IMG/VR virus record: IMGVR_UViG_3300032050_000004
Coordinates: 158,070 to 222,069 of that record
Reading direction: 5' to 3' (one strand)
DNA length: 64,000 nt
Each line of letters starts with the position of its first letter. Position 1 is the first letter of the stretch. A program made the translations under genes and the position numbers. Of this stretch, positions 19,391 through 38,453 are shown piece by piece. The notes under the pieces are model-generated. The model was not told where the DNA came from. It saw only the letters and a program-made list of their open reading frames with translations, and ran no database searches.

Positions 19391-19440
19391 AATAATTATT
19401 GTTTTTTTTGATCTATTTATTGGTAATTAACAAATTATCA

Positions 19441-20094
19441 ATGAATAATCTCGATAATAAATATATTATTTCTGAATTTTTGGCAATCGATCCAGATGTA
19501 CAGAAAATAAATGAGGCTATTGCTAAAAATGAGCCTATAATCGTTCCATGTATTTTACAAAAAGCCAACACTCTGAACAGAAATGGTAGAGTTTATCCAT
19601 TCGATATTTTAAAAAGAGAGGTAGATAAATATCAGCAATTAGTAAAAGAGAGAAGTGCAATGGGTGAGTTGGATCACCCGGATTCTGCTGTTATTTCCCT
19701 AGCAAATGTATCTCACATTGTAACAGAAATGTCATGGAAAGGTGAGGTTTTATATGGAAAAATTCAGATCGCAGATACACCTGCAGGCGACACTGTGAAA
19801 GGTCTTTTAAAAAGTGGTATCAAATTAGGTATTTCATCTCGTGGTGTAGGTTCTGTAAAGAAAAACAGAGAAGATCAAGATGTTGTTCAGGAAGATTTTG
19901 AATTAATTGGTTTTGATATTGTTTCATCACCTTCAACACCCGGAGCTTATTTATTTAAGGAATCTAAGCAGTGGGGTATGAAAAAATTAATTGATTCTGA
20001 TACTAAATTAATTAAGACAGATGAGGTTAAAAATAAAATTAAAAACCTAAAAAATAGTTTGAGTAATTTATCTAAAGATAGTTTCTGGAACTAA
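19441..20094 (+). CDS. Prohead core protease (T4 gp21-like)
   Basis: LQKANTLNRNGRVYP, GELDHP, GISSRGVGS, FDIVSSPSTPGA; start moved to ATG 19441 because TATTTAT (19414-19420) lies inside the longer TTG-start ORF. Confidence 0.92.
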   Translation: MNNLDNKYIISEFLAIDPDVQKINEAIAKNEPIIVPCILQKANTLNRNGRVYPFDILKREVDKYQQLVKERSAMGELDHPDSAVISLANVSHIVTEMSWKGEVLYGKIQIADTPAGDTVKGLLKSGIKLGISSRGVGSVKKNREDQDVVQEDFELIGFDIVSSPSTPGAYLFKESKQWGMKKLIDSDTKLIKTDEVKNKIKNLKNSLSNLSKDSFWN

Positions 20095-21716: not shown

Positions 21717-23336
21717 ATGTCTGAATTATTAAACAGCGGACAAGTTGGTATGACCGTATTACGCAACTTGTCTGAACAAAGAAAACAAATCGTTAAGAAC
21801 TGGGAAAACTCAGGTCTTCTCGAAGGTATTGCCGGTCAAAAAAAAGCTAACATCGCTCAATTGTTAGAGAACCAAGCATCTCACATGCTTAATGAGGTAA
21901 CTCTAGATAGTTCTGCAGGTCGTTTCGACACTGTTGCATTTCCGATGGTAAGACGTATCTTCTCAAGATTACTTGCTTCTGAAATCGTATCAGTTCAACC
22001 TCTTGCTTTACCTTCTGGTTTGTTATTCTATATGGACGCTCAAGTATCTTCTGATAAAGTAGCTCCTTATTCTATAGCAAATTCTGGTGGTGGTTCTGGT
22101 CCTACATTCCCTAACAAATCTGCTTACGAGCGTTTCTATGACAATCGTGGATATGATGCATCTTGGGGTGCTGCAACTCAGCGTGTAGGTTCTGCAATCA
22201 GCATCGGTTCTGGTTCTACTACAACTGGTTTGATTGCTACGGCTGTAACATTAAGCTCTAATTTTGATGTAACTCTTAATCAGTCTTACACTTCTTTAGT
22301 ACTTTCTGCTAATACAGCTATTGCTTACAACGGTGTGGCTTTATTTGCTGCAGGTCAAACAGGTGTTACATTCTACTCTAATTTACAGACTTATGGTGCT
22401 GAATTAGTACAGAGTAACACTCCGGGTAACGTGAACAACATCTATAACATTGTTATCGATTTACGTCCTGCTCCAACTTCTACTGCTGCTTATTCATGGG
22501 TACAATCTGGATTAACTGCAGGTGTTGGTGGTGTAGGTGCTGGTATCATCCTTACTCCGATGTTCTACACTTACAACACGATTGAGGCTAGTCCAAACAT
22601 GTCTGAATTAACTCTTCGTTTCTCTTCTGTAACTGTAAACTCAATTACAAGAAAAATGAGAGCACATTGGACACCTGAATTAGCTCAAGATTTAGAAGCA
22701 TACCACTCAATTGATGCTGAGGCTGAATTGACAGCTTTATTGTCAGAAGAAGTTGCTGCTGAAATCGATCGTGAAATCATCCGTGATCTTGTTATCGGTG
22801 CTATGTTCGAAGCTCGTTGGGATTACCAAGGCTTACGTGACAACGTAAACTTCTTCGGTACTCAGAAAGACTGGAACCAAACTCTTATCACTCGTATCAA
22901 CGAAATTTCTGCCCAGATCCACAAAGCTACCCTTCGTGGTGGTGCTAACTGGGTTATCTGTTCTGCAGAAGCTGGTGCGATCTTCGATGATCTTGAGTAC
23001 TTCCATGTAGATTCTTCTGCATCACCTGAGACTGAAAAGTATAACTTAGGTATGGAAAAAATCGGTAACTTAGGTAACCGTTATGTAGTGTACAAAGATC
23101 CTTACATGCCTGCTAACATCGTGTTGGTTGGACACAAAGGTAATACCTTCCTTGAGGCTGGTTACGTGTACGCTCCTTACATTCCTCTTCAATTAACTCA
23201 GACGATCTACGATCCGAATGACTTTACACCTCGTAAAGGTATCATGACTCGTTATGCGAAGAAGATGATCAACAACCGTTTCTATGGTGTGATCTACCTT
23301 GACAATCTTAACACTTATACTCAGGTATATAGCTAA
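21717..23336 (+). CDS. Major capsid protein (T4 gp23-like)
   Basis: NIAQLLENQA, FPMVRRIF, VSVQP, RKMRAHWTPELAQDLEAYHSIDAEAELT, YAPYIPL, PRKGIMTRYA; strong high-expression codon bias. Confidence 0.97.
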   Translation: MSELLNSGQVGMTVLRNLSEQRKQIVKNWENSGLLEGIAGQKKANIAQLLENQASHMLNEVTLDSSAGRFDTVAFPMVRRIFSRLLASEIVSVQPLALPSGLLFYMDAQVSSDKVAPYSIANSGGGSGPTFPNKSAYERFYDNRGYDASWGAATQRVGSAISIGSGSTTTGLIATAVTLSSNFDVTLNQSYTSLVLSANTAIAYNGVALFAAGQTGVTFYSNLQTYGAELVQSNTPGNVNNIYNIVIDLRPAPTSTAAYSWVQSGLTAGVGGVGAGIILTPMFYTYNTIEASPNMSELTLRFSSVTVNSITRKMRAHWTPELAQDLEAYHSIDAEAELTALLSEEVAAEIDREIIRDLVIGAMFEARWDYQGLRDNVNFFGTQKDWNQTLITRINEISAQIHKATLRGGANWVICSAEAGAIFDDLEYFHVDSSASPETEKYNLGMEKIGNLGNRYVVYKDPYMPANIVLVGHKGNTFLEAGYVYAPYIPLQLTQTIYDPNDFTPRKGIMTRYAKKMINNRFYGVIYLDNLNTYTQVYS

Positions 23337-27445: not shown

Positions 27446-27518
27446 TTTATTAAATTATATACTAATAAATAATTTGTTTTTTTAATTTTAATAAATTATA
27501 GATTATTTATATTTAACC

Positions 27519-28691
27519 ATGGAAATAAGAGAATTAATAAAAAAAGTAATTAAAGAGTCTTTTTTAACAGAAAATGAAGTTAAAAGAATAGATTTTAGCT
27601 ACCCTTTACCTGATGATTTAAATAAATTGAAGAATTATTTCGATGAGAATAATTTTGAACTTTTTGTAGTAGGTGGAGCCGTGCGTGATATGATCTTAGG
27701 TAAGGAACCTAAAGACATAGATTTAGTATCTGATGCTACTCCTGATGACGTAAAAAGGATTTTACCAGATGAATATAGAATAATTCCCAAAGGAGAAGCT
27801 TTTGGTATCCTTCAAATAATTACTCCAGAAGGTGGTGATTACGAGATTGCTCGTTATCGTGAGGATATTGGAAAAAAAGATGGAAGAAGACCAGATTCGG
27901 TCAAATTTTCTACTATTGATTCAGATGCTTTAAGAAGGGATTTAACAATTAATGCTCTATATTACGATATAAATAAAAATCAAATTATAGATTTTGTTAA
28001 TGGTTATGAAGATATTCTCAAAAGAAATATTAAAACTGTTGGTAAAGCAGAAGATAGATTTGAAGAGGATCGATTAAGAATATTGAGAGCATTTAGATTT
28101 GCAGCTAGATTTAATTCAAACTTAGATCAGGATATAATAGAGGCTTTAAGAAAAAATAATTCTCTAAAAGGGGTATCTGAAGAGAGAATTAGAGATGAAT
28201 TCCTTAAAGGTATAAAAAGTGCTCAATCTGTTGTAAAATTCCTTACCGATTTAGAAAATTATGGATTACTAAAACAAATTTTAGATGATTTGAATTATAG
28301 TCAATCTGAATTCGTAGAATCAAAAGATTATATCGTGTTATTGGCTAATTTACTTAAAAATAATCCAGTTCATAAAATTCAAACTATTCTTAATAATCTT
28401 AAATATACAACTGATGAAATAAGAAAAATTATTTTCCTTGTTTTGTTTTTAAATTTCGATCCTGAATCTGTATATAATTTTAAAGTAAAAGAAAATGTTT
28501 CGAAAATATCTCCAGAAGAATTAAAGGAATTTGCCAGAATAAATTCTATAAATTCAAATATGGTAGATAAATTCATAGATTTTAAATTATCTGTTTCAGG
28601 GGATGAACTTTTACAGAAGGGATTCAAGGGAGCATCATTAGGAAAAGAAAAAGAAAGATTAGAGACTGTTAACTTCCTTGATACTCTTTAG
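27519..28691 (+). CDS. cca: tRNA nucleotidyltransferase (class II CCA-adding enzyme / polyA-polymerase family) with N-terminal extension
   Basis: VGGAVRD...KDIDL, GRRPD loop, RRDLTINA, EDRLRILRAFRF. Confidence 0.9.
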   Translation: MEIRELIKKVIKESFLTENEVKRIDFSYPLPDDLNKLKNYFDENNFELFVVGGAVRDMILGKEPKDIDLVSDATPDDVKRILPDEYRIIPKGEAFGILQIITPEGGDYEIARYREDIGKKDGRRPDSVKFSTIDSDALRRDLTINALYYDINKNQIIDFVNGYEDILKRNIKTVGKAEDRFEEDRLRILRAFRFAARFNSNLDQDIIEALRKNNSLKGVSEERIRDEFLKGIKSAQSVVKFLTDLENYGLLKQILDDLNYSQSEFVESKDYIVLLANLLKNNPVHKIQTILNNLKYTTDEIRKIIFLVLFLNFDPESVYNFKVKENVSKISPEELKEFARINSINSNMVDKFIDFKLSVSGDELLQKGFKGASLGKEKERLETVNFLDTL

Positions 28692-28712
28692 TTTTTTCGA
28701 CTATTTATTTAC

Positions 28713-29729
28713 ATGAAAAAGGATAAAATTCCCGGAGGCAAAGCAAAAGGCAAATCTTTAAAAGATATTGCGATTATGCACTGTAAATCTGATTCAAAAA
28801 ACAAATCAGATGAAAGAAAAATTGAAAAAATGTTAGACCATTTAAAGTTGGAATTAAAAAAAGGGATTAAAACTGAATTGGAACATACAACCAGTGAAGA
28901 ATTTGCCAAAGAAATAGCTATGGATCATTTATATGAAGATCCAAAATATTATACAAAACTTTTAAAAATTGAAGAAATGAAAAAAACAAAAAAAATAAAC
29001 ATCAACGATATATCTGAAATGGTTAAGAAAGCTCTTAATGAAGAATTTGTTGGTGGTGTAAATTATGATAATGTTTTAGCAACTGAACTAAAAGAAAAAG
29101 TTGGTGATTTAAGCAAATTAACTCCTTATGTTTTAGAACTAGGTAATGAAATTCAATCAGATTCATCTGGTAAAATTCATGTTTATGATGAGGGAAAAAA
29201 AGTTAAGATATTCAACAATATTGATGACTTTTTAAAAGGTATCAAATACGGTCCTGTTAGAATTACCGAAGAAGATTCTTCAATGCCACATAAAGATCAT
29301 GAAGCTATGATGGCAAAAGGAGAAATCAGAGATATGGTTAAAAATGCAAAAGAAGTTTATAAAATGATTCAACCCGGTGATGAACTTCCCGGATGGATTT
29401 CTGCTTATATTACTTTAGCTTCAGATTATATGCATAGCATCGCTGAATACATGACTGAAAAACATAGTGGTGGTGAAGAACTAACTGAAGATACAGAAGA
29501 TGCACCAAAGAAATTAACAATGGATCAATTTTGTGAATGGTTAGGTTTGCCAACAGATAAAGTTCAATTAGGAATTGAAATTGCAAAGGTTTCAGACCCG
29601 GATGGAGCATACACTCACTTACAGGATATGGGTGAAGATGAAGCAGCGGAAGCAATAGAAGCCATATATTTTGAACATGGTTCTCTTAAAGAAGCAATTG
29701 CTGCTTGTAAAGAAGATTTAGGCATTTAA
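28713..29729 (+). CDS. Multi-module phage protein with DUF5661-like domain; putative head protein
   Basis: KGIKTELEHT...EIAMDHLYEDPKYYTKL; HEAMMAKGEI...LPGWISAYITLASDYM; KKALNE site. Confidence 0.65.
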   Translation: MKKDKIPGGKAKGKSLKDIAIMHCKSDSKNKSDERKIEKMLDHLKLELKKGIKTELEHTTSEEFAKEIAMDHLYEDPKYYTKLLKIEEMKKTKKININDISEMVKKALNEEFVGGVNYDNVLATELKEKVGDLSKLTPYVLELGNEIQSDSSGKIHVYDEGKKVKIFNNIDDFLKGIKYGPVRITEEDSSMPHKDHEAMMAKGEIRDMVKNAKEVYKMIQPGDELPGWISAYITLASDYMHSIAEYMTEKHSGGEELTEDTEDAPKKLTMDQFCEWLGLPTDKVQLGIEIAKVSDPDGAYTHLQDMGEDEAAEAIEAIYFEHGSLKEAIAACKEDLGI

Positions 29730-29749
29730 ATAAATTTATTTTTTTACAT

Positions 29750-29782
29750 AACCATAGTTTTTTATTAAACTATGGTTTTTTT
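29750..29782 (+). terminator. Intrinsic terminator
   Basis: AACCATAGTTT/AAACTATGGTT hairpin followed by a T run. Confidence 0.75.
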
Positions 29783-29806
29783 TATTTAAATAATATCTTT
29801 ATATTA

Positions 29807-30496
29807 ATGAAAAAGGACATAATTATTTTTCACCACAGTTATTTAGTAAATAATTGGTTAGAAATTATGAGTGAACAACTAGACCTTTTAAAGAAAAGCG
29901 AACTTTATGAAAATGCTCAACAAATACATTTTTGTTGTTTTTCTGAAATAAAAGAAAATATTATTGATTTTGTTAAATTGATCCAAGAATTTGATTTAGA
30001 TGAAAAATGTACAATTGTAGTTGAACCTTATAATGATAATGAAAGATTAACTCTTACATATATGCAAACAATTTGTAAGAATTTATCTGATGAAAAAGTT
30101 CTTTATTTTCACACAAAAGGTGTTACATCATACTTAAGATACGGAGAATCTGGAGATAGAAATATAAAATCTTGGCGAAATATAATGGAATTTTATTTAA
30201 TTGAAAATTGGAGGAAATGTTTTGAATTGATGAATAATCATGATGTGGTAGGAGCATTTTATGGCCCATGGCATCAATTAACAGGACAGATCATTAATTA
30301 TTATTCAGGTAACTTTTGGTGGTCCAAGGTATCTCACATAAAAAACACTCCCGATATGAAGAAGAGAGATAATTGGTTAGGTTGTGAATCTTTGATCACC
30401 TCAATACCTCATGTTTGGTATAATTTCAGATTTGCCCCCCCTAATTCAAGTATGTATGATGTTTATTTCGACCCAAATGAATATAGATTGAATTAA
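29807..30496 (+). CDS. Putative glycosyltransferase-like protein
   Basis: VLYFHTKGV, WRNIMEFY and YSGNFWW motifs seen in viral glycosyltransferase-like proteins. Confidence 0.5.
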   Translation: MKKDIIIFHHSYLVNNWLEIMSEQLDLLKKSELYENAQQIHFCCFSEIKENIIDFVKLIQEFDLDEKCTIVVEPYNDNERLTLTYMQTICKNLSDEKVLYFHTKGVTSYLRYGESGDRNIKSWRNIMEFYLIENWRKCFELMNNHDVVGAFYGPWHQLTGQIINYYSGNFWWSKVSHIKNTPDMKKRDNWLGCESLITSIPHVWYNFRFAPPNSSMYDVYFDPNEYRLN

Positions 30497-31533
30497 ATTT
30501 CTATATTTTTTATAAATGGTTTTTCGTATTTAGGTTCAATTATTTTCCATATAATATTATCATAGCTTTTTTTATCTAACATTTTAAATAATATGGCTGG
30601 ATATTTTTGTTTTTTTGCATACGCTGCAAATTCAGCTCTGGTGTCTCCCATTTTCCAATGGAAAAATCTATGGAATGATTTGTTAGATTCTTCTTCTACT
30701 AATCTATAATTTCTTTCTAAATTAATTCTGGTTTCCTTTACCCAATCATAAAATTCGTCTGGAACCCTCTCTAATATCTCAGCAAAGTCATTACCATCAA
30801 CTAAATGTTGCCATATAGTCCTAGATGAAACATTAGTTAGAATCCTATGTAATCGAACATAATCGTCAAACTTTACTTTTAATCTAAAACCGTTTTGGAA
30901 TTTAACAACAAAACCCTCTTTGTTATTCTCTTCCAATTTTTTTAGCTGTGAAATATCTTGAATACCATCGTACCTTTTTACAATAGGAAAACCTATTGGT
31001 TCTAATTCACAATCCAATCCTGTAGCCTTATCTATTACAGCTAACAAAACCAAATCATCAACATTACCATAATTTACAACTATTCTATTTTCCGGATAAA
31101 TTATCTCGAACAAATATGTTTTTGATTTATCTAAATTAGGAATTACATACTTATATCTGTTATGTAAAATGTTTGTTGCATAAATAGCTTGATCAGATTC
31201 AAAAGATCCTCTAGTGGCTATGTATGGCATGTCTCCAATCCAATATAAAATACCTAGTGAACCATCCATTTTTTCATATACTTCAAAAGATGTTTTAGGT
31301 ATATCATCGTGTGTATGTTCTTCGAGGTTGAAAAACTTTCTAAATGGCCTTGCTACTACATTGTAATTTGAATCAAGAATTAAACCTCGACACTGTAAAG
31401 TAATTTCGTTCCAAACCCTCTCATATTGAGCTTTTGGACCATAGTTATAAATAAAATAATCAGCCTTTTTGTGCTTCTGCACAATGACTAATTTTTCATC
31501 TATCATTTTATTTAATTCGTTGATATCTAACAT
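30493..31533 (-). CDS. RNA ligase, T4 Rnl1 family
   Basis: CRGLILD, VVARPFRKFFN, motif I EKMDGS, ATRGSF, FEIIYPENRIVV, EGFVV, LKVK. Confidence 0.92.
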   Translation of the reverse strand: MLDINELNKMIDEKLVIVQKHKKADYFIYNYGPKAQYERVWNEITLQCRGLILDSNYNVVARPFRKFFNLEEHTHDDIPKTSFEVYEKMDGSLGILYWIGDMPYIATRGSFESDQAIYATNILHNRYKYVIPNLDKSKTYLFEIIYPENRIVVNYGNVDDLVLLAVIDKATGLDCELEPIGFPIVKRYDGIQDISQLKKLEENNKEGFVVKFQNGFRLKVKFDDYVRLHRILTNVSSRTIWQHLVDGNDFAEILERVPDEFYDWVKETRINLERNYRLVEEESNKSFHRFFHWKMGDTRAEFAAYAKKQKYPAILFKMLDKKSYDNIIWKIIEPKYEKPFIKNIEI

Positions 31534-31615
31534 TTTGTATACTTACAAACAATTTAAACGTTAAATTAATTAAATTTGTTACAAAAATAAGGATATTTAT
31601 AATAAAAATTATTTT

Positions 31616-32095
31616 ATGTTCGAAAGAAAACTAAGAAAGACTGTACGTTCAATCATGGAGAGTGAATATGTGAAAGATCAGTCCATCTACAATATCGTAG
31701 GAAAAAAAATGGTAGATATATTCTCAAATAATCCCGGTATAAATAAAATTAGAAATAAAATTATAACCTATGCGAAATTCTTTGAAGGTGGTGAAGAATT
31801 CAAGGGTTACTATTCAGCAAAAGAATATTTGCGTATGGAAGGATATGAATCAGGATCAATGATGAGAGATTATCCTATACCATTTATGAAAATGGGTAAA
31901 ACTACAGTAGATAATAGAGGTAATACAATTATAATTACAAAATACGAGGAAGAAAGACCATTGATAATTACCAAATATGATGCTCTGTCTCAAGAAAGTT
32001 TTGATGAATTAGATGGTGTAATAATTCCATCTCCTGATCAAAACAATATGAGAGATGGAAACATTTATGTCGTTTTCTTTAATTTCCCAGATTGA
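31616..32095 (+). CDS. Hypothetical protein with N-terminal head-cargo-like helix
   Basis: MFERKLRKTVRSIMESE; TATTTAT at 31594-31600. Confidence 0.6.
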   Translation: MFERKLRKTVRSIMESEYVKDQSIYNIVGKKMVDIFSNNPGINKIRNKIITYAKFFEGGEEFKGYYSAKEYLRMEGYESGSMMRDYPIPFMKMGKTTVDNRGNTIIITKYEEERPLIITKYDALSQESFDELDGVIIPSPDQNNMRDGNIYVVFFNFPD

Positions 32096-32479
32096 TTATT
32101 TTATCTCGTCAATAAATCCAAATAAATGTTTATTGACAATTCTATACCATAATTCTCTCTGCCACTCGAATCCTAAATTTCCATAGTGCTTTTCAAATTC
32201 TATTATCTCTTTAACTATCAAAGCTCTGTCATCTGGAGTAATTCTGTTCCATTCTTCTAAAACCCAATCTACTATTCGTTGAACTGATCCTGTTTTTCTT
32301 CCAAGTGCATACCTGAGTGCAAAAATCATTAAGGTAGAATCGCATACAAAACGTTCTTCTTTCCATAGAAATTGATTGTCACTTAAAATATTAAGGATAT
32401 AATCCTTGTTTGATTTTAAATAATTTATGAATATTTTTTCACTGGAAAAGGTTTTAGGAAATTTGATTTTCTTTTTCAT
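32096..32479 (-). CDS. Hypothetical phage protein
   Basis: 127 aa, FALRYALGR motif. Confidence 0.65.
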   Translation of the reverse strand: MKKKIKFPKTFSSEKIFINYLKSNKDYILNILSDNQFLWKEERFVCDSTLMIFALRYALGRKTGSVQRIVDWVLEEWNRITPDDRALIVKEIIEFEKHYGNLGFEWQRELWYRIVNKHLFGFIDEIK

Positions 32480-32518
32480 TTTTAAAACTATTTATTAATA
32501 TAATAAAATTCTATAAAA

Positions 32519-32794
32519 ATGAAACTTACTAAAAAGGAATTTGAGAACCTTATTAAAGAAGAAGTGAAGAAAGCTATCGAGGAAATTAATATTCTTGGTG
32601 AAGGTAAATCTAAACCCTCGGCTGGTCTTTCTGCAAAACAAAAATCCAAAGTTGCTAAAAAAGCAAAAAAAGGTGGTGATATCGGTAAGCCCGGTAAAGG
32701 TTTCAAAGATGTTGAAGCTAAAGCAAAAGAATGGGGTGCTGATGATCCTAAAGCCGTAGCAGCAGCTGTATTATGGAAAAATGTGAAAAGATAG
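32519..32794 (+). CDS. Small basic putative head internal protein
   Basis: FENLIKEEVKKAIEEINILGE followed by a Lys/Ala/Gly-rich tail; TATTTAT at 32489-32495. Confidence 0.65.
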   Translation: MKLTKKEFENLIKEEVKKAIEEINILGEGKSKPSAGLSAKQKSKVAKKAKKGGDIGKPGKGFKDVEAKAKEWGADDPKAVAAAVLWKNVKR

Positions 32795-33222
32795 ATCTTA
32801 AATGTAATGTTTGTTCTGATAAATTAAATAATTTTAATTGGTCTTCAGGAAAACAGAAAAAAGGATGGTTTATTTGTAATAATTGTCATACGGACAAATA
32901 TAAAAAATACAGAAAAAAACATCCGTTCAAGGCTCGTCTTTCATATTTTAACAAAAGATACGATGGAAATTTGAAAGTTCAAGATCTTGAATTAATTTAC
33001 GAAAATCAAAAAAAGAACTGTCCACTATGTGGTGATCCTATTGATATAAAAGATAAATTTTGTTTAGATCATGTCGTTGCTAGAAATAGTGAAGGTTTAA
33101 CAACAAAAGAAAATATCCAAATATTATGTGAAAATTGTAATATTGGAAAATTTAAAATGAGTACAGAAGATTATATAAAACATTGTGAAAAAGTAGTAAA
33201 TAATTATAAAAAAAATGATTGA
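32773..33222 (+). CDS. HNH endonuclease
   Basis: CPLC...LDHVVARNSEGLTTKENIQILCENCNIGK plus an N-terminal CxxC...CxxC. Confidence 0.85.
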   Translation: MEKCEKIDLKCNVCSDKLNNFNWSSGKQKKGWFICNNCHTDKYKKYRKKHPFKARLSYFNKRYDGNLKVQDLELIYENQKKNCPLCGDPIDIKDKFCLDHVVARNSEGLTTKENIQILCENCNIGKFKMSTEDYIKHCEKVVNNYKKND

Positions 33223-33529
33223 CGTTTATGCTGAACCCGGCTCCTATATAGCTGGAGCTAATAATATCGCTTTGACTAATGCATTCAAAAAATTATTGAA
33301 CGCAAGACCAAATACAACTATTCCTTTCTTTTTTGAAAAGGATGGAAGAAAACTCATGGGAAGAGCTAAAACTTTTCAAGGCTCTCAAGGTGATTATCCA
33401 ACTTACTATATCAATTTTTTTGATTTGGATAACGAAGAAGATGGTATGAAAATGTTAGAAGGTAAAGTTTTTGCCAAAGGAAGATTGCAATTAGAAGAAA
33501 GATTATTCGATTATTATAATTCAATTTAA
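33215..33529 (+). CDS. Hypothetical protein
   Basis: 104-aa ORF. Confidence 0.6.
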   Translation: MIDVYAEPGSYIAGANNIALTNAFKKLLNARPNTTIPFFFEKDGRKLMGRAKTFQGSQGDYPTYYINFFDLDNEEDGMKMLEGKVFAKGRLQLEERLFDYYNSI

Positions 33530-33532
33530 AAA

Positions 33533-33763
33533 ATGAAGAATTTTATTAGAAAACCTTTTACTGTTTTTTTAATAATAATATCATTTTTGTTTATCTTCAA
33601 CAACTCAAATAATAAAGTACCTGAAAAAAGTTCAATTTTGGACTTTGACCCAAACTCAACAGTAATAGTCCCTAACTATAGACAGTTATTTTTAAGGCAC
33701 TATGAATCAAAATATAAAGTAAATTATAGTAAAGATAATACTATAAACAGTCAGAGCAAGTAA
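33533..33763 (+). CDS. Small membrane-anchored protein
   Basis: N-terminal TM. Confidence 0.55.
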   Translation: MKNFIRKPFTVFLIIISFLFIFNNSNNKVPEKSSILDFDPNSTVIVPNYRQLFLRHYESKYKVNYSKDNTINSQSK

Positions 33764-33803
33764 GTTTTTATTTGTTCTTAAAAACTTTTTAAAAAAAAAT
33801 ATC

Positions 33804-34904
33804 ATGAAAAATTTATTGAAAAATAAACTGCTATCTATTAAAGTAAGTGTAGTGTTATTATTAGTGTTTTTGACTACTATAACTTGTAGTAAAACCGATG
33901 AATCACCTAAAATTATTCAAGAAGAAATAAATTCTTCTGTTGTATATGATGATACACTAATGGATCCCGGACCAGATCCTGAATTTGTTTCAGTTGAAAA
34001 TAGAATTAATGTTGAAAATCTTTCAGCAAGAGTAATTGGTGTTAATACAATTAACACTTGGGAAAGATATATGTATATAGATAAAACTGATACAATATAT
34101 AATTCAATATCAGCTTCAAGAAGGTTATCAGGGTATCTTAAAAAATATGGCTTTAAAGGTGTTTATTTGTATAGTACCTCAGCAATTGTTTCCTCTACTT
34201 CAAACTATTCTAACTTTAGTAGATTTGTAAAAACACTTAGTGATAGTGGAATCGTATATAGAGGAGTAGCAAGCGGTAGTGCCACAACTTTTAAATCTGG
34301 TGGAGGAATATCAAATTATAATAACTCCCAATCTGATGCAACTAAAAAAATTAATAGAGCTAATTTGGAATTGGAATGGTGGAACAATGTAACAACTTGG
34401 GATAACTGGAACTCTATAAATCAACAAATATCTTTAGCAACCATAACCGATAATGATTTCTATGAAGGTTGGTATAAAAATATGGGCTCCACCATAGATA
34501 CTGTCGCAGCTAGAGATCAAGTTAGATTTTCTGATAGAGTACTTTTACATTGCTATCAAAATGGTATCCCGACTTATTCATATGCAAATGCCCAAAGCAC
34601 CGGTGCAACCGGAGGAAGATTGGATATAATTGCTAAAGGAGCAAGACAAGTTGGAAGAAAAATAGATTTGTATATTATAATCTCTTCAGAAAATACTGCT
34701 TGGGGAGCTAGTAATACTTTTACAGGGCCAGCACTTGCTAATGCCTATCTATCAGGTCAAGCTAATCCCTATCTTTTTATAGAAAATCAAGCCTATAATA
34801 ATATTTTTAATAATATGACCACCTTTCAAAAACAATGGATCAACTTAAAAGGTTTCGTTTGGTTTACTAAACGATACTGCTACAAAGCTGTACCTCCAAG
34901 ATAA
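33804..34904 (+). CDS. Putative lipoprotein with glycoside-hydrolase-like (TIM-barrel) domain
   Basis: Hydrophobic leader ending TIT-C; alternating beta/alpha pattern, LELEWWN, Trp/Tyr rich. Confidence 0.45.
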   Translation: MKNLLKNKLLSIKVSVVLLLVFLTTITCSKTDESPKIIQEEINSSVVYDDTLMDPGPDPEFVSVENRINVENLSARVIGVNTINTWERYMYIDKTDTIYNSISASRRLSGYLKKYGFKGVYLYSTSAIVSSTSNYSNFSRFVKTLSDSGIVYRGVASGSATTFKSGGGISNYNNSQSDATKKINRANLELEWWNNVTTWDNWNSINQQISLATITDNDFYEGWYKNMGSTIDTVAARDQVRFSDRVLLHCYQNGIPTYSYANAQSTGATGGRLDIIAKGARQVGRKIDLYIIISSENTAWGASNTFTGPALANAYLSGQANPYLFIENQAYNNIFNNMTTFQKQWINLKGFVWFTKRYCYKAVPPR

Positions 34905-34991
34905 TCTTTTTGCGAAAAGTATTGAATTGTGATACTTTGTGCAAAAAAATTCTGTTTCTGGAATTTGACATTTTTAGTAAAAAATAGAAAT

Positions 34992-35024
34992 AAAAAACCC
35001 TAGAGAATCTCTAGGGGTTTTTTT
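34992..35024. terminator. Bidirectional intrinsic terminator closing the tRNA cluster
   Basis: AAAAAACCCTAGAGA-AT-CTCTAGGGGTTTTTT between convergent units. Confidence 0.85.
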
Positions 35025-35025
35025 G

Positions 35026-35099
35026 TAGTCCCGAGGCGATTCGAACGCCTGACCGTCTGCTTAGAAGGCAGATGCTCTATCCAGCTGAGCTACAGGACC
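35026..35099 (-). tRNA. trnR: tRNA-Arg(UCU), no encoded CCA
   Basis: GGTCCTGTAGCTCAGCTGGATAGAGCATCTGC-CTTCTAA-GCAGACGGTCAGGCGTTCGAATCGCCTCGGGACTA. Confidence 0.95.
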
Positions 35100-35105
35100 A
35101 ATTAG

Positions 35106-35177
35106 TAGCGGGAAGAGGATTCGAACCTCTGACTTCCAGATTATGAGTCTGGTGACCTACCTCTGGTCCATCCCGCA
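35106..35177 (-). tRNA. trnM: tRNA with CAU anticodon (Met/fMet/Ile2 identity unresolved), no encoded CCA
   Basis: TGCGGGA...CCAGA-CTCATAA-TCTGG...GGTTCGAATCC...TCCCGCTA; U1-U72 mismatch. Confidence 0.88.
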
Positions 35178-35194
35178 GTATTTTTTTCTTATTA

Positions 35195-35224
35195 CAAAAA
35201 TAGTAATAAAAAATTAAAAACAAA
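35195..35224 (-). promoter_or_regulatory. Bacteroidota sigma-A-type promoter upstream of tRNA-CAU
   Basis: TTTG (35221-35224), 18 nt, TATTTTTG (35195-35202). Confidence 0.55.
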
Positions 35225-35249
35225 TTTTATAATAAAATTATAAGATTTG

Positions 35250-35323
35250 CTCTCCTGACTGGGCTCGAACCAGTGACCCATTGATTAACAGTCAATTGCT
35301 CTGACCTACTGAGCTACAGGAGA
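35250..35323 (-). tRNA. trnN: tRNA-Asn(GUU), no encoded CCA
   Basis: TCTCCTGTAGCTCAGTAGGTCAGAGCAATTGA-CTGTTAA-TCAATGGGTCACTGGTTCGAGCCCAGTCAGGAGAG. Confidence 0.95.
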
Positions 35324-35389
35324 TTTTTTTAATTTATGTAGCCGGGGCGGGAATCGAACCCGCAAGACCTTTAGGGGTCAATGGATTTT

Positions 35390-36098
35390 CTTACTACTAT
35401 AGTTTTCACTACCCTTTCGGTTTGTAGTCTGGACTATACCTTCACCATATTTATCAACTTAGGTGTTCCGTGTCTAGTCTCTACACACGCCCAGTTATAA
35501 TTATTATAACTTGCTTGGCTCGGTATTCCCATTTTACAGGGTTCACCGAATTTACGGAATTCTACTCTCGAAATTTCTAACGAGGCACTCTATTTTTATT
35601 TTTTCCACGATAAGTAAAAGTAAAAGCGTGACAGTTTGGACATAAAATTTTTAAATTTTCTATTCTATTATCATCATTTATACCATTAATATGCTCTAAT
35701 TCAAGTGGAATTTCTTTATTCATCCAATGAGTATTTAAACAAGATTCGCATTTTTTTTCTTTAATACCTTCTTTAAATAATCTCAATTTCAATTTATAAG
35801 TTTGAGTATAAGGAGAATTTTCTATTAGAATTTCTTCTATTTTAAATTCTTTACCAAACTTTCTAAATTTCTCTCCTTGATTCCAAGCAGATCCTGTAAA
35901 ATGAGAAATATCAATATTAAATTTCTTGAATTTTAGTTTCAACGTTTTATAATTACCACCAACTGGTAATATTTTTAGTTGCCTACAAACTTCAGCTATT
36001 GATAAACTATTTTTTACAATTACTTCTAATTCTTCTTTCGTATATTTATATTTCATGAATATAAATAGTAAGAAAAAAGTTAAACGTGGTTATAGTCA
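35390..36098 (-). mobile_element. Group I intron (709 nt) with HNH ORF in the P1 loop
   Basis: IGS GAG 35588-35590; P3 TTCCGT/ACGGAA; P AAATTCGGTGAA; Q AATACCGAG; R GTAGAGACTA; S GAAGGTATAGTCC; terminal G at 35390. Confidence 0.92.
35577..36056 (-). CDS. Intron-encoded HNH homing endonuclease
   Basis: CESC...LELEHINGINDDNRIENLKILCPNCH; last codons overlap the IGS/P2; TATTTAT at 36061-36067. Confidence 0.9.
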   Translation of the reverse strand: MKYKYTKEELEVIVKNSLSIAEVCRQLKILPVGGNYKTLKLKFKKFNIDISHFTGSAWNQGEKFRKFGKEFKIEEILIENSPYTQTYKLKLRLFKEGIKEKKCESCLNTHWMNKEIPLELEHINGINDDNRIENLKILCPNCHAFTFTYRGKNKNRVPR

Positions 36099-36155
36099 AA
36101 GTCCATCGTGTTTGCCTATTTCACCACCCGGCCATTAATTCAAAGAACAACGATA

Positions 36156-36186
36156 CAAATATATATAAAATATATATAAAAACAAA
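36156..36186 (-). promoter_or_regulatory. Bacteroidota sigma-A-type promoter for the tRNA cluster
   Basis: TTTG (36183-36186), 19 nt, TATATTTG (36156-36163). Confidence 0.7.
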
Positions 36187-36211
36187 AGAGCTGGAATTAT
36201 CCAGCTCTTTT
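36184..36211 (-). terminator. Intrinsic terminator downstream of the OMP gene
   Basis: AAAAGAGCTGGA/TCCAGCTCTTTT hairpin. Confidence 0.8.
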
Positions 36212-37418: not shown

Positions 37419-37584
37419 GACATTTATTAGAACGCCAGAGGATTACCAGAAGGCTTTGGATTTATTTAGAACATTATGGTTAAATTCCAATAATTTCCCA
37501 ACAATAAAAGCAAAGGTTGCTTTAATGGAAATGATAGAGGAATACGAGTTCAATAATTTTGTAAAAAATAGAAATTTTAATTAA
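37405..37584 (+). CDS. 59-aa protein resembling the N-terminal helices of HigA-type antitoxins (below ORF-track cutoff)
   Basis: MQSSKTFIRTPEDYQKALDLFRTLW...KVALMEMIEEYE. Confidence 0.4.
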   Translation: MQSSKTFIRTPEDYQKALDLFRTLWLNSNNFPTIKAKVALMEMIEEYEFNNFVKNRNFN

Positions 37585-38453
37585 GCTGGTTGATTAGCTC
37601 TTCTTCTGCCCCAGATATTGCCATAATTTTGATCAATTTCACCTTTTTTCATGAAAAAAAGTTCTCTTGGGGTATATAGTTGTTTTTGATCTTCTAAAGA
37701 TAAGTCGGGTCCATTTACAGGATAGCTCCATTTGAAACCTTTGAATTTACCTTCGGTTTTCATTTGTTTCAGTAGATCGATAACATATTTCATGTATTTT
37801 TCTACTGGTTTTTTATTTTGTTTCCCTTTTACTTGGGTGATATTACCTGATCCTTCATTATAAGCTATTGTTACATGAGGTTCTTTAGTTTTGGAGTTTC
37901 TAAGTGAAAATAGAGTTGTAGCTTGACCATCTCTTCCGCAGTGACCCATAGCATTTCCTTCTTCTGGGGAATTGTTTGTTTTCAAATCAATCCAATAATA
38001 TCCTTCTGGATATTGTTTGAATACTTCTCCGGATTCATCTTCAATAACTCCGGAAGCGGTAAGTGATTCGTGCCATTCGATAGCAGTATTAAGTGCTTCC
38101 TCTAAATTTTTAATTTGTTTAAGATCGACTTGTGGTCTATTAGGGAATTTAAGCCATTCCATAATAGTATTTACTGTGGTTTCGTTATTTTTTAGATATT
38201 CGATAACTTTATTTTGGTCTAGTTGGGGTAAAATTTCTTTTAAATTAGAACTAGTTATACCATGATCTCCGGCATATTGTTTTGTTGACCAGTCTCCGAG
38301 AACCATTGCATATTTTCCACCTATTTCATTTAAAAAAGTAGCAAATTCTTCTGAGAAACCTAATTTAACAAGTTTTTCGTTTTTATTTTCAGATAAAATA
38401 CCTGCTAATTCTTTAATTCTACTAGAATATTTTTCACTTAATAACATTACCAA
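37581..38453 (-). CDS. PcfJ-like C-terminal domain protein
   Basis: EEGNAMGHCG...LFSLRN...EPHVTI...ITQVKGKQNKKP; N-terminal RIKELAGILSE. Confidence 0.65.
   Translation of the reverse strand: MVMLLSEKYSSRIKELAGILSENKNEKLVKLGFSEEFATFLNEIGGKYAMVLGDWSTKQYAGDHGITSSNLKEILPQLDQNKVIEYLKNNETTVNTIMEWLKFPNRPQVDLKQIKNLEEALNTAIEWHESLTASGVIEDESGEVFKQYPEGYYWIDLKTNNSPEEGNAMGHCGRDGQATTLFSLRNSKTKEPHVTIAYNEGSGNITQVKGKQNKKPVEKYMKYVIDLLKQMKTEGKFKGFKWSYPVNGPDLSLEDQKQLYTPRELFFMKKGEIDQNYGNIWGRRRANQPA

What the first reader, a model, noticed from the sequence alone, without database searches (positions are those of the whole stretch)
27519..36133. tRNA maintenance kit: CCA-adding enzyme, Rnl1 ligase and four tRNAs that all lack encoded CCA
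Seen: after the discriminator the tRNA genes continue CAA (Arg), CTA (CAU), CAA (Asn) and CAT (Leu), never CCA, and a class II nucleotidyltransferase and an Rnl1 ligase lie within 9 kb. The CCA enzyme alone carries the putative cargo tag and late motif. Established: T4 Rnl1 with PNK repairs anticodon-nuclease-cleaved tRNA. Inference: defence against host tRNA-cleaving immunity, possibly with CCA enzyme pre-loaded in the virion. No PNK/phosphatase is visible in this window.
Basis: partly seen in the sequence, partly recalled or inferred. Interest (0 to 1): 0.62.

Follow-up and report, generated by a model that had tools for sequence, protein, structure and literature searches.

The report
Phage tRNA kit with tagged CCA enzyme
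A T4-like freshwater jumbo phage carries a known type of tRNA upkeep module (CCA-adding enzyme, RNA ligase, four tRNA genes), with two unusual features: the CCA enzyme has a T4-style capsid-propeptide tag, and one tRNA gene is split by a self-splicing-type intron.

Summary
The observation mostly holds. ORF 27519-28691 is a class II tRNA nucleotidyltransferase closest to true CCA-adding enzymes. ORF 30493-31533 (-) is a T4 Rnl1-type ligase with all catalytic motifs. None of the four tRNA genes encodes CCA.

The fourth tRNA is not a plain gene. tRNA-Leu(UAA) is split between U34 and A35 by a 709-nt group I intron carrying an HNH endonuclease ORF.

The "cargo tag" is real. Residues 1-18 of the CCA enzyme match an exclusively N-terminal motif shared by unrelated proteins of this phage. 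They end in (I/L)xE sites like those cut by the T4 gp21 prohead protease, which this phage encodes 8 kb upstream.

No polynucleotide kinase was found in the 222-kb contig (87% complete). A stand-alone HAD phosphatase and a 2H phosphoesterase domain lie elsewhere in it.

The "late motif" is not exclusive to the CCA gene; Rnl1 also has TATAAATA upstream.

Phage tRNA-repair kits that include CCA enzymes are already described, and tRNA genes without CCA are common (4 of 8 in T4). The packaging idea is plausible but unproven. The same intron family splits tRNA genes in several other viral contigs, which a 2014 review said had not been seen in phages.

The parts
27519..28691 (+). CCA-adding enzyme gene (class II tRNA nucleotidyltransferase, 390 aa)
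   Evidence: Pfam PolyA_pol 4e-35 plus PolyA_pol_RNAbd; phrog_2244 2e-55. Motifs GGAVRD..DxD, RRD, EDRLR and ERIRDE are visible and invariant in alignment A1. The best PDB hits are true CCA-adding enzymes at about 1e-30.
27519..27572 (+). Codons for the N-terminal tag, residues 1-18 (MEIRELIKKVIKE|SFLTE|), with two (I/L)xE sites
   Evidence: Top non-seed hit of a leave-one-out motif HMM. The motif is exclusively N-terminal in the proteome. It has no counterpart in cellular CCA enzymes. AlphaFold gives low pLDDT for residues 1-20. It resembles T4 gp24, IPII/III and gp23 cleavage contexts.
27465..27471 (+). ATAAATA (core of the T4 late-promoter type), 54 nt upstream of the CCA start codon
   Evidence: The motif is enriched upstream of tagged genes, 10/15 against 48/263, Fisher p 1e-4. 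It is also present upstream of Rnl1.
28713..29729 (+). 338-aa DUF5661 protein between the CCA gene and Rnl1; function unknown
   Evidence: Pfam DUF5661 4e-11. Its apparent P-loop is part of the DUF5661 motif, not a kinase. The positional counterpart in relatives carries a tag-like N-terminus.
29807..30496 (+). 229-aa ORF of unknown function, DUF8361-like
   Evidence: No Pfam, PHROG or NCBIfam hit. Atlas feature search gives DUF8361 clusters at 0.98. It is absent at this position in relatives L013 and L042.
30493..31533 (-). Rnl1-type RNA ligase (346 aa)
   Evidence: PF09511 6e-15; phrog_562 2e-66; TIGR02308 9e-20. T4 Rnl1 structure 2C5U matches at 2e-17, with motifs I (KMDG), III, IV (EGFVVK) and V (KVK) aligned.
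32773..33222 (+). Free-standing HNH/EndoVII-type endonuclease
   Evidence: Pfam HNH 1e-8; phrog_1035 8e-13.
36184..36211 (-). Terminator-like hairpin upstream of the tRNA operon
36099..36133 (-). tRNA-Leu(UAA) exon 1 (35 nt, ends ...CUU at U34)
   Evidence: ARAGORN with introns allowed; sequence; the spliced exons fold into a class II cloverleaf.
35390..36098 (-). Group I intron, 709 nt; it begins after U34 and ends in G
   Evidence: RF00028 scores 50.3 bits (gathering 50), E 1e-11, on 35408-35628. The core shares exact blocks of up to about 41 nt with the intron that splits the capsid gene of pelagiphage HTVC120P. The same family splits tRNA genes in other viral contigs.
35577..36056 (-). Intron-encoded HNH homing-endonuclease ORF (159 aa), sitting in the P1 loop
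   Evidence: phrog_10822 3e-49. ORF-less versions of the intron in L030 and L045 lack exactly this segment.
35339..35389 (-). tRNA-Leu(UAA) exon 2 (51 nt, starts AAAAUCCAU...), followed by CAT
35250..35323 (-). tRNA-Asn(GUU), followed by CAA
35106..35177 (-). tRNA with anticodon CAU (Met or Ile2), U1xU72 mismatch, followed by CTA
35026..35099 (-). tRNA-Arg(UCU), followed by CAA
34998..35016 (-). Terminator-like hairpin ending the tRNA operon
19399..20094 (+). T4 gp21-type prohead protease (context for the tag)
   Evidence: PF03420 Peptidase_S77, E 7e-31, above cut-off.
21717..23336 (+). T4 gp23-type major capsid protein with an N-terminal propeptide (...HMLNE|V)
   Evidence: PF07068, E 2e-72; sequence.

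Best explanation
This is the tRNA end-maintenance module of a T4-like freshwater jumbo phage. It sits just downstream of the head-gene block.

Shown:
- A complete class II CCA-adding-type enzyme is present.
- An Rnl1-type RNA ligase with intact catalytic motifs is present.
- A four-gene tRNA operon (Leu-UAA, Asn-GUU, CAU, Arg-UCU) is present, and none of its genes encodes CCA.

Inferred, tRNA upkeep:
- The phage enzyme adds C75-A76, or all of CCA, to the phage's own tRNAs. It can also rebuild 3' ends of host tRNAs that are trimmed or cut.
- Rnl1 reseals tRNAs nicked with 5'-phosphate and 3'-OH ends.
- For cyclic-phosphate ends, only partial end-healing is available: a stand-alone HAD phosphatase and a 2H phosphoesterase domain encoded elsewhere in the contig. 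No 5' kinase was found.

Inferred, packaging:
- The first ~18 residues of the CCA enzyme are a detachable propeptide of the T4 capsid-targeting kind.
- This propeptide directs the late-made enzyme into the scaffolding core of the prohead.
- The gp21-type protease clips it at IKE|S or LTE|N.
- The enzyme is then ejected with the DNA, so tRNA 3'-end repair is available before any phage protein is made.

Separately, tRNA-Leu(UAA) must lose a 709-nt group I intron, presumably by self-splicing, to become functional. That step needs no ligase.
For: Enzyme identity:
- Family scans identify both enzymes.
- The best PDB matches of the CCA enzyme are full CCA-adding enzymes (6IBP, 1MIV, TRNT1) at about 1e-30. 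Poly(A) polymerase scores 1e-25, A-adding enzymes 1e-18 and CC-adding enzymes 1e-7. The flexible loop has full length.
- The catalytic and templating motifs are invariant across 20 homologs.
- The Rnl1 motifs align to T4 Rnl1.

tRNAs: none of the four encodes CCA.

Conserved linkage:
- The order head module, CCA, X, Rnl1 (minus strand) recurs in relatives at 58-59% identity (L013 and L042).
- A more distant phage places the CCA enzyme within 8 kb of 17 tRNA genes, a kinase-2H fusion and Rnl1.
- Such kits are described for jumbo phages (PMC7824862).

End-healing parts:
- HAD protein: all four HAD motifs are conserved. Its nearest families are HAD_SAK_1, an RNA-repair family, and the HAD fold.
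- 2H domain: it matches the phosphoesterase half of the relative's kinase-2H fusion at 1e-14.

Tag:
- Leave-one-out HMM: the CCA N-terminus is the best non-seed hit at 11.7 bits. Shuffled proteomes give 0.05 hits of 10 bits or more.
- Two N-terminal motif classes occur in 15 proteins and nowhere beyond residue 35.
- Tagged genes are enriched for ATAAATA upstream (p 1e-4).
- The phage encodes a gp21-type protease and a gp23-type capsid protein.
- T4 gp24 (MAKINELLRE|S), IPII/III (MKTYQEFIAE|A) and gp23 (GSFLTE|A), read from the T4 record, resemble the tag.
- In T4 the capsid-targeting sequence suffices to package foreign proteins (PMC3012670, PMC9958956).
- AlphaFold: residues 1-20 have low confidence and the body starts at residue 21.
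- The tag is kept in homologs down to 47% identity, yet absent from cellular enzymes.

Intron.
Against: - There is no expression, virion or activity data.
- No 5' polynucleotide kinase was found in the contig, so the T4-style repair of anticodon-nuclease cuts is not encoded here. The contig is only 87% complete.
- The CCA enzyme scores below every NCBIfam equivalog cut-off. PcnB is its second-best model.
- tRNA genes without CCA are ordinary in phages.
- The four anticodons match the phage's commonest codons, which explains the tRNAs without invoking any defence role.
- Rnl1 in T4 also promotes tail-fibre attachment, as the phrog_562 name records.
- The tag patterns used were written after seeing the sequences.
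- The I/K/E-rich composition of a 29% GC genome favours such helices.
- The HAD assignment rests on sub-threshold matches.
Confidence: 0.55

Rival explanations
1. This is plain translation support, not counter-defence. The four tRNAs supplement codons that the AT-rich phage uses heavily. Their genes lack CCA, so a phage CCA-adding enzyme simply secures their maturation, especially if host supply is limiting. Rnl1 is kept for its second T4 role in tail-fibre attachment or for general RNA metabolism. The enzyme is cytoplasmic and its N-terminal helix has some other role.
For: - AGA is 72% of Arg codons, TTA 50% of Leu, ATA 41% of Ile and AAT 79% of Asn.
- T4 has four CCA-less tRNA genes and no tRNA-repair role is needed to explain them.
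- No kinase was found.
- phrog_562 is the gp63 'RNA ligase and tail fiber attachment catalyst' family.
Against: - The CCA gene and Rnl1 stay adjacent across 58-59% identity relatives.
- In a distant relative the CCA enzyme clusters with a kinase-2H healing enzyme and Rnl1.
- This reading leaves the shared, exclusively N-terminal tag unexplained.
Confidence: 0.3
2. The N-terminal motif is not a capsid-targeting propeptide. It is a generic amphipathic helix (for oligomerisation, membrane or ribosome association), or it reflects a nucleotide-level signal at the 5' end of late mRNAs. It appears N-terminal only because of that.
For: - The genome is 29% GC, so I/K/E/N-rich helices are common.
- The motif co-occurs with a shared upstream promoter-like element, so co-regulated 5' regions could share RNA-level features.
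- The motif is also kept in CCA homologs from phages whose head protease type I could not establish.
Against: - Shuffled proteomes of the same composition almost never give such hits.
- Substitutions within the motif are conservative at the protein level (I/V/L, K/R, E/Q).
- Both motif classes end in (I/L)xE, the T4 protease context.
- The gp21-type protease, the scaffold and a gp68-like core protein carrying a similar helix lie in the same window.
Confidence: 0.3
3. The nucleotidyltransferase is not a CCA-adding enzyme. It is a poly(A) polymerase, or a split-function (A-adding or CC-adding) enzyme that acts on RNA stability.
For: TIGR01942 PcnB is the second-best NCBIfam model (170 bits against 184 for the CCA model), and both fall below their cut-offs. 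The two activities are notoriously hard to tell apart by sequence (PMC2532741, listed).
Against: - PDB ranking favours CCA-adding enzymes over poly(A) polymerase by about five orders of magnitude in E-value, and over A-adding and CC-adding enzymes by far more.
- The EDxxR templating motif, the RRD motif and a full-length flexible loop are present and invariant in the family.
- The gene travels with CCA-less tRNA genes.
Confidence: 0.07

Closest known systems
Jumbo-phage RNA repair and tRNA provisioning systems (Iyer, Anantharaman, Krishnan, Burroughs and Aravind 2021, PMC7824862)
   Same: The parts list is the same: phage tRNAs, an ATP-grasp Rnl1-type ligase, a 2H phosphoesterase, a stand-alone 'Swiss-army-knife' HAD phosphatase and a CCA-adding enzyme.
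   Different: No polynucleotide kinase or RlaP was found here. The parts are scattered, with HAD and 2H about 70-100 kb from the CCA gene and Rnl1. The capsid-type tag on the CCA enzyme is not part of that description.
T4 Pnkp + Rnl1 repair of PrrC-cleaved tRNA-Lys
   Same: The ligase is of the Rnl1 family with all nucleotidyl-transfer motifs aligned to T4 Rnl1, and the phage has a T4-type head.
   Different: The defining partner Pnkp (5' kinase / 3' phosphatase) is not detectable. T4 has no CCA enzyme of its own.
T4 internal proteins IPI-III and Alt, packaged through an N-terminal capsid-targeting sequence and clipped by gp21
   Same: Unrelated proteins share a short N-terminal peptide that ends in (L/I)xE. 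The phage encodes a gp21-type protease and a scaffold. T4 cargo counters host defence (PMC3012670, PMC9958956).
   Different: The peptide sequence differs and falls into two classes. The cargo would be a tRNA-processing enzyme, which is not known for T4. Packaging is not demonstrated.
[quoted passage not shown]
   Same: Same gene, and the same insertion point between U34 and A35 (that position for the cyanobacterial intron is from my own knowledge). The 5' exon ends in U and the intron ends in G. It matches Rfam RF00028.
   Different: It sits in a phage tRNA gene and carries an HNH endonuclease ORF in the P1 loop. Its closest relative by sequence is an intron in a pelagiphage capsid gene. An exact 24-nt core word is absent from 185,579 species genomes except one contig binned into a MAG. 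I did not compare it directly with a cyanobacterial intron.
T4 tRNA gene cluster with the SegB homing endonuclease
   Same: A mobile endonuclease gene is embedded in a phage tRNA cluster, and the internal-protein genes lie beside the tRNA cluster in T4.
   Different: SegB is free-standing and of the GIY-YIG type. Here the HNH gene rides inside an intron within a tRNA gene.

Membership tests
Class II CCA-adding enzyme (tRNA nucleotidyltransferase) | Pol-beta-type head with motif A (GGxVRD...DxD) and motif B (RRD) | tested here: met
   GGAVRD, DIDLV and RRDLTINA are present and invariant in 20 homologs. PF01743 E 4e-35.
Class II CCA-adding enzyme (tRNA nucleotidyltransferase) | Motif D (EDxxR) amino-acid template, and a flexible loop of full length between motifs A and B | tested here: met
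   EDRLR is invariant. The loop aligns without a gap to that of CCA-adding enzyme 6IBP.
Class II CCA-adding enzyme (tRNA nucleotidyltransferase) | Score above the curated equivalog cut-off | tested here: not met
   NF009814 scores 183.9 bits against a cut-off of 290. PcnB TIGR01942 scores 170.4 against 305.65. The protein is a divergent phage branch.
Class II CCA-adding enzyme (tRNA nucleotidyltransferase) | Adds exactly C-C-A to tRNA 3' ends | not testable with these tools
   Needs an enzyme assay.
T4 Rnl1 RNA ligase family | Covalent nucleotidyl-transferase motifs I (KxDG), III, IV and V | tested here: met
   KMDGS, FEIIYPENRIV, EGFVVK and LKVKFDDY align to the T4 Rnl1 motifs.
T4 Rnl1 RNA ligase family | C-terminal domain that gives tRNA specificity | tested here: inconclusive
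   The PHROG and TIGR02308 alignments reach residues 332-341. The pairwise alignment to 2C5U ends at residue 249.
T4-type tRNA break repair pathway (Pnkp + Rnl1) | 5'-kinase / 3'-phosphatase end-healing enzyme encoded by the phage | tested here: not met
   The 222-kb contig has no AAA_33 or PNK3P match. The kinase half of a relative's kinase-2H protein has no homolog here. Only a HAD phosphatase candidate and a 2H domain are present. The contig is 87% complete.
T4-type capsid-targeted, protease-processed head cargo | A short N-terminal peptide shared by otherwise unrelated proteins of the phage | tested here: met
   The partner proteins have no Pfam or PHROG family.
T4-type capsid-targeted, protease-processed head cargo | The peptide ends in an (L/I)xE site, and the phage encodes a gp21-type protease and a scaffolding core | tested here: met
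   IKE|S and LTE|N in the CCA enzyme. Peptidase_S77 7e-31. Scaffold and gp68-like ORFs are present. T4 contexts were read from the T4 record.
T4-type capsid-targeted, protease-processed head cargo | The protein is present in virions in processed form | not testable with these tools
   Needs virion proteomics.
Group I intron in tRNA-Leu(UAA) | Group I catalytic core | tested here: met
   RF00028 scores 50.3 bits (gathering 50), E 1e-11, over the full model.
Group I intron in tRNA-Leu(UAA) | Insertion between U34 and A35, 5' exon ending in U, intron ending in G, and exons that restore a cloverleaf | tested here: met
   The same junctions occur in four other viral tRNA-Leu genes.
Group I intron in tRNA-Leu(UAA) | Self-splicing | tested here: inconclusive
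   Contigs of one metatranscriptome and two possible RNA runs gave no usable exon-exon junction.

The most novel reading that the evidence does not exclude
In this clade of T4-like freshwater jumbo phages, tRNA-repair enzymes are virion cargo. This applies to the CCA-adding enzyme here and, in a distant relative, also to a kinase-2H end-healing enzyme with the same kind of N-terminus. A T4-type capsid-targeting propeptide loads them into the prohead, the gp21-type protease clips them, and they are injected with the DNA. Damage to tRNA ends by abortive-infection nucleases can then be reversed before the phage has to translate anything.
Probability: 0.35. Interest if true: 0.8.

Novelty: new variant of a known kind. 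Interest (0 to 1): 0.58.

Why it matters
tRNA-cleaving defences stop translation, so a phage that must first translate its repair enzymes faces a chicken-and-egg problem. Delivering a CCA-adding enzyme inside the capsid would solve it. That would add an RNA-repair enzyme to the short list of known injected counter-defence proteins, just as nucleases that cut tRNA CCA tails are being described (PMC12851939).

The tag itself, if it works like the T4 capsid-targeting sequence, marks a set of roughly 15 unknown proteins as candidate injected effectors.

The intron finding bears on a stated gap. A 2014 review noted that all phage group I introns then known lay in protein-coding genes despite the many phage tRNA genes (PMC3984707). 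Here one intron family splits tRNA-Leu(UAA) and tRNA(CAU) genes in more than a dozen viral contigs and also splits a pelagiphage capsid gene.

Tried and rejected
- The apparent Walker A motif at the start of ORF 28713-29729 is part of the DUF5661 motif, not a kinase.
- The search for related loci with the CCA enzyme returned only fragments of the same phage.
- The genome search cannot reach the records behind L013 and L015, so I could not ask whether the closest relative encodes a kinase elsewhere.
- Sequence and profile searches of the HAD candidate against the PDB gave nothing significant. Foldseek gave the HAD fold only at TM about 0.45.
- Aligning the split tRNA-Leu to the intron-less tRNA-Leu of L013 was uninformative because the two tRNAs differ in sequence. 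My first intron alignment used the wrong strand and was redone.
- Read laying on one RNA run, one possible RNA run and two DNA runs gave only short contigs, many from unrelated tRNA genes. I found no credible exon-exon joint and no intron-less allele.
- 'Late motif on the CCA gene only' is rejected, because Rnl1 also has TATAAATA upstream.
- Literature searches found no report of a CCA enzyme in virions or of a group I intron in a phage tRNA gene. The library is not complete, so this does not prove absence.
- I did not use complex prediction or the large representative search, because no claim here rests on them.

Full report
**What the genome is.**
The window is the last 64 kb of a 222,069-bp IMG/VR viral contig. 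The contig has 29.3% GC, is linear, and CheckV rates it 87% complete. It encodes a T4 gp21-type prohead protease (window 19399-20094, PF03420, E 7e-31) and a gp23-type major capsid protein (21717-23336, PF07068, E 2e-72). An acidic scaffold protein and a gp68-like core protein lie between and before them. Near-identical DNA occurs in lake and freshwater metagenomes from 16 studies. This is therefore a T4-like freshwater jumbo phage with an unknown host.

**Checking the observation.**
ARAGORN and Rfam find three tRNA genes on the minus strand: Arg-UCU, CAU and Asn-GUU. It is tRNA-Leu(UAA) at 35339-36133, with a 709-nt insert after U34.

ORF 27519-28691 is a class II nucleotidyltransferase and ORF 30493-31533 (minus strand) is an Rnl1-type ligase. 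The split nature of tRNA-Leu was missed.

The lack of encoded CCA is real but not remarkable. In the T4 record, 4 of 8 tRNA genes lack CCA. In related phage loci, 21 of 26 lack it.

**The nucleotidyltransferase.**
Motifs A (GGAVRD, DxD), B (RRD), D (EDRLR) and E (ERIRDE) are present and invariant in 20 homologs of 47-85% identity. Against solved structures, the best matches are full CCA-adding enzymes (6IBP, human TRNT1, 1MIV) at about 1e-30. E. coli poly(A) polymerase scores 1e-25, A-adding enzymes 1e-18 and CC-adding enzymes 1e-7. The flexible loop aligns at full length.

All NCBIfam equivalog models are below their cut-offs, with PcnB second. The CCA assignment is therefore the best reading, but it is not proven. 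Phage CCA enzymes are common: 453 phage records match by tblastn, many of them annotated as tRNA nucleotidyltransferase.

**The ligase and the missing healing enzymes.**
The ligase aligns to T4 Rnl1 (2C5U, E 2e-17) with motifs I, III, IV and V in place.

The whole contig has no AAA_33 or PNK3P match. A more distant phage (CCA enzyme 48% identical) encodes a 314-aa kinase-2H phosphoesterase fusion beside Rnl1. Only its 2H half has a homolog here, at the C-terminus of a 1016-aa protein at contig 81980-85030 (E 1e-14).

A 239-aa protein at contig 117761-118480 conserves all four HAD motifs across 30 homologs. Its nearest families are the 'Swiss-army-knife' RNA-repair HAD family and related phosphatases. 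It folds confidently as a HAD phosphatase. All of these family assignments are below threshold.

So the phage has a ligase, a probable 3'-phosphatase and a cyclic phosphodiesterase domain, but no detectable 5' kinase. As encoded, the kit fits breaks with 5'-phosphate and 3'-OH ends and trimmed 3' ends. It fits the cyclic-phosphate/5'-OH ends of the T4 PrrC paradigm less well. This last point is inference from the known end requirements of ATP-dependent ligases (PMC7824862).

**Conserved linkage.**
In two relatives (CCA enzyme 58-59% identical) the same order recurs directly after the head genes: capsid gene, a few variable genes, a 264-267-aa minus-strand gene, the CCA gene, one gene, then Rnl1 on the minus strand. 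In the more distant phage the CCA gene lies within 8 kb of 17 tRNA genes, the kinase-2H gene and Rnl1. In two other distant contigs no ligase is nearby.

The CCA-Rnl1 pairing is therefore a conserved feature of this clade. The concept of such kits is already published.

**The tag.**
- **Absent from cellular enzymes.** Residues 1-25 of the CCA enzyme have no counterpart in cellular enzymes.
- **Best match to a motif built without it.** A motif HMM built from four other proteins of this phage, leaving the CCA enzyme out, finds the CCA N-terminus as its best non-seed hit (11.7 bits). Twenty shuffled proteomes gave on average 0.05 hits of 10 bits or more.
- **Strictly N-terminal.** Written as patterns, this motif and a second one (..RMxELAGIxxE) occur in 8 and 7 proteins. 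All occurrences lie within the first 35 residues, and none lies elsewhere in 67,789 residues. These patterns were written after seeing the sequences.
- **Partner proteins.** The tagged proteins have no Pfam or PHROG family.
- **Protease sites.** Both motifs end in (I/L)xE. The CCA enzyme has two such sites, IKE|S and SFLTE|N.
- **T4 comparison.** In the T4 record, gp24 begins MAKINELLRE|S, IPII and IPIII begin MKTYQEFIAE|A, and the gp23 propeptide ends GSFLTE|A. The removal of 65 residues from gp23 and of short N-terminal peptides from the internal proteins by gp21 comes from PMC9958956. The gp24 cut after residue 10 is from my own knowledge. The ~10-residue capsid-targeting sequence is enough to load foreign proteins into T4 heads (PMC3012670, PMC9958956).
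- **Promoter link.** Ten of 15 tagged genes have ATAAATA, the core of the T4 late promoter type, within 80 nt upstream, against 48 of 263 other genes (Fisher p 1e-4).
- **Structure model.** The AlphaFold model has a low-confidence helix at residues 2-15 and a disordered linker. The confident body starts at residue 21.
- **Conservation.** The tag pattern is kept in CCA homologs down to 47% identity. In the distant phage the kinase-2H enzyme starts the same way (MKTTIKEILRE).

Together these points make a T4-style propeptide the best reading. No virion data exist.

**The intron.**
- **Junctions.** Exon 1 (36133-36099) ends ...CUU. The insert (36098-35390) ends in G. Exon 2 starts AAAAUCCAU. The joined exons fold into a class II cloverleaf with anticodon UAA (MFE -32.7 kcal/mol).
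- **Catalytic core.** Region 35408-35628 matches Rfam Intron_gpI over the full model at 50.3 bits (gathering 50), E 1e-11.
- **Endonuclease ORF.** A 159-aa HNH ORF (phrog_10822, E 3e-49) fills the loop between the 5' splice site and a candidate guide sequence, GAGUGCC, at 35590.
- **Closest relative.** The core shares exact blocks of up to about 41 nt with an unannotated intron that splits the capsid gene of Pelagibacter phage HTVC120P into two annotated pieces.
- **Other viral contigs.** A scan of IMG/VR with a 31-nt core word found 21 loci. Seven of these are fragments of this same phage. Others carry the intron at the same U34|A35 position in different tRNA-Leu(UAA) genes: L021/L031 and L022 with an HNH ORF, and L030 without one. 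Seven contigs carry a 228-nt ORF-less version in a tRNA(CAU) gene, by my reading after U33.
- **Prokaryote genomes.** In 185,579 prokaryote species genomes, an exact 24-nt core word occurs once. That contig is binned into a MAG and again has a split tRNA-Leu(UAA), with an HNH gene just upstream.
- **An intron-less relative.** The close relative L013 has an uninterrupted tRNA-Leu(UAA).
- **Literature.** A 2014 review states that all phage introns then known were in protein-coding genes (PMC3984707). My searches found no later report of one in a phage tRNA gene.
- **Splicing not shown.** Public RNA contigs gave no usable junction.

**How it most likely works.**
Shown by sequence: the enzymes, the CCA-less tRNA genes, the intron anatomy, the tag and the protease.

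Inferred:
- The tRNA operon, bracketed by two terminator-like hairpins, yields precursors that need 3' trimming, CCA addition and, for Leu, intron removal.
- The phage CCA enzyme supplies the CCA addition and can also mend host tRNA tails.
- Rnl1 reseals nicked tRNAs.
- The CCA enzyme is made late, enters proheads through its propeptide, is clipped and is delivered at the next infection.

The four anticodons match the phage's most used codons (AGA 72%, TTA 50%, ATA 41%, AAT 79%). Codon supplementation alone therefore explains the tRNAs, and the defence role remains a hypothesis.

**Verdict.**
The kit is a new member of a published class. The two features that go beyond it are the capsid-type tag on a tRNA-processing enzyme and a mobile group I intron family living in phage tRNA genes. 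Both are supported by sequence evidence only.

Noticed in passing
L021, L022, L025, L026, L028, L029, L030, L031, L033, L035, L037, L045 (viral contigs); window 35390-36098: One group I intron family splits tRNA-Leu(UAA) genes at U34|A35 in at least five distinct viral contigs, with or without an HNH ORF. It also splits a tRNA(CAU) gene in seven contigs (228 nt, no ORF). A 2014 review said no phage tRNA intron was known.
   Followed up: partly
L018:2420-2760 (Pelagibacter phage HTVC120P, record 19616-19806): The capsid gene of this cultured pelagiphage is annotated as two separate 'capsid protein' CDS (gp29, gp30). The gap between them holds an unannotated group I intron closely related to the one in the window.
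   Followed up: partly
G000:C1:85080-86132 (-), outside the window (L017:9080-10132): A 350-aa monomeric phenylalanyl-tRNA-synthetase-like protein (class II core 'F' domain plus the FDX-ACB anticodon-binding domain). By my own knowledge this is the architecture of mitochondrial PheRS. It lies next to the 1016-aa protein that carries the 2H domain.
   Followed up: no
G000:C1:81980-85030 (-), outside the window (P0124): A 1016-aa protein with no family match except a C-terminal 2H phosphoesterase domain (two HxT motifs), which is homologous to the phosphoesterase half of a relative's kinase-2H enzyme. The first ~880 residues are unexplained.
   Followed up: partly
window 37581-38453 (-), plus six genes outside the window (contig 30-58 kb and 116 kb): A second, exclusively N-terminal motif (..I+RMxELAGIxxE) is shared by seven proteins. 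It also ends in (I/L)xE.
   Followed up: partly
window 35025, 35105, 35249, 35338; L013, L015, L021, L022, L030: In this phage and its relatives, the base after the discriminator is C in most tRNA genes, followed by an A-rich trailer (CAA, CAAA, CTA). C74 therefore looks encoded while C75 and A76 are not. With C at roughly 15% of bases, this is far more than chance.
   Followed up: partly
window 35026-35099, 35106-35177, 35339-36133: The first acceptor pair is weak in all four tRNAs: G1-U72 in Arg and Leu, a U1xU72 mismatch in the CAU tRNA, and U1-A72 in Asn. The CAU tRNA lacks the three G-C pairs of an initiator anticodon stem, so its identity (Met or Ile2) is open.
   Followed up: no
L022:6880-7263: A viral contig carrying the split tRNA-Leu also encodes a full-length tmRNA (RF00023, 100.8 bits).
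   Followed up: no
window 9942-14207 (+) and 20189-21700 (+): A 1421-aa protein has long collagen-like GSS/GTS triplet runs and is probably a fibre. The scaffold protein contains many EEDMEEG repeats.
   Followed up: no
L044 (T4 record 108636-109640) compared with window 30493-31533: In T4 an RNA ligase gene (rnlB, Rnl2 type) sits on the opposite strand just after head genes 21-24. Here an Rnl1-type ligase occupies a similar position after the head block.
   Followed up: no
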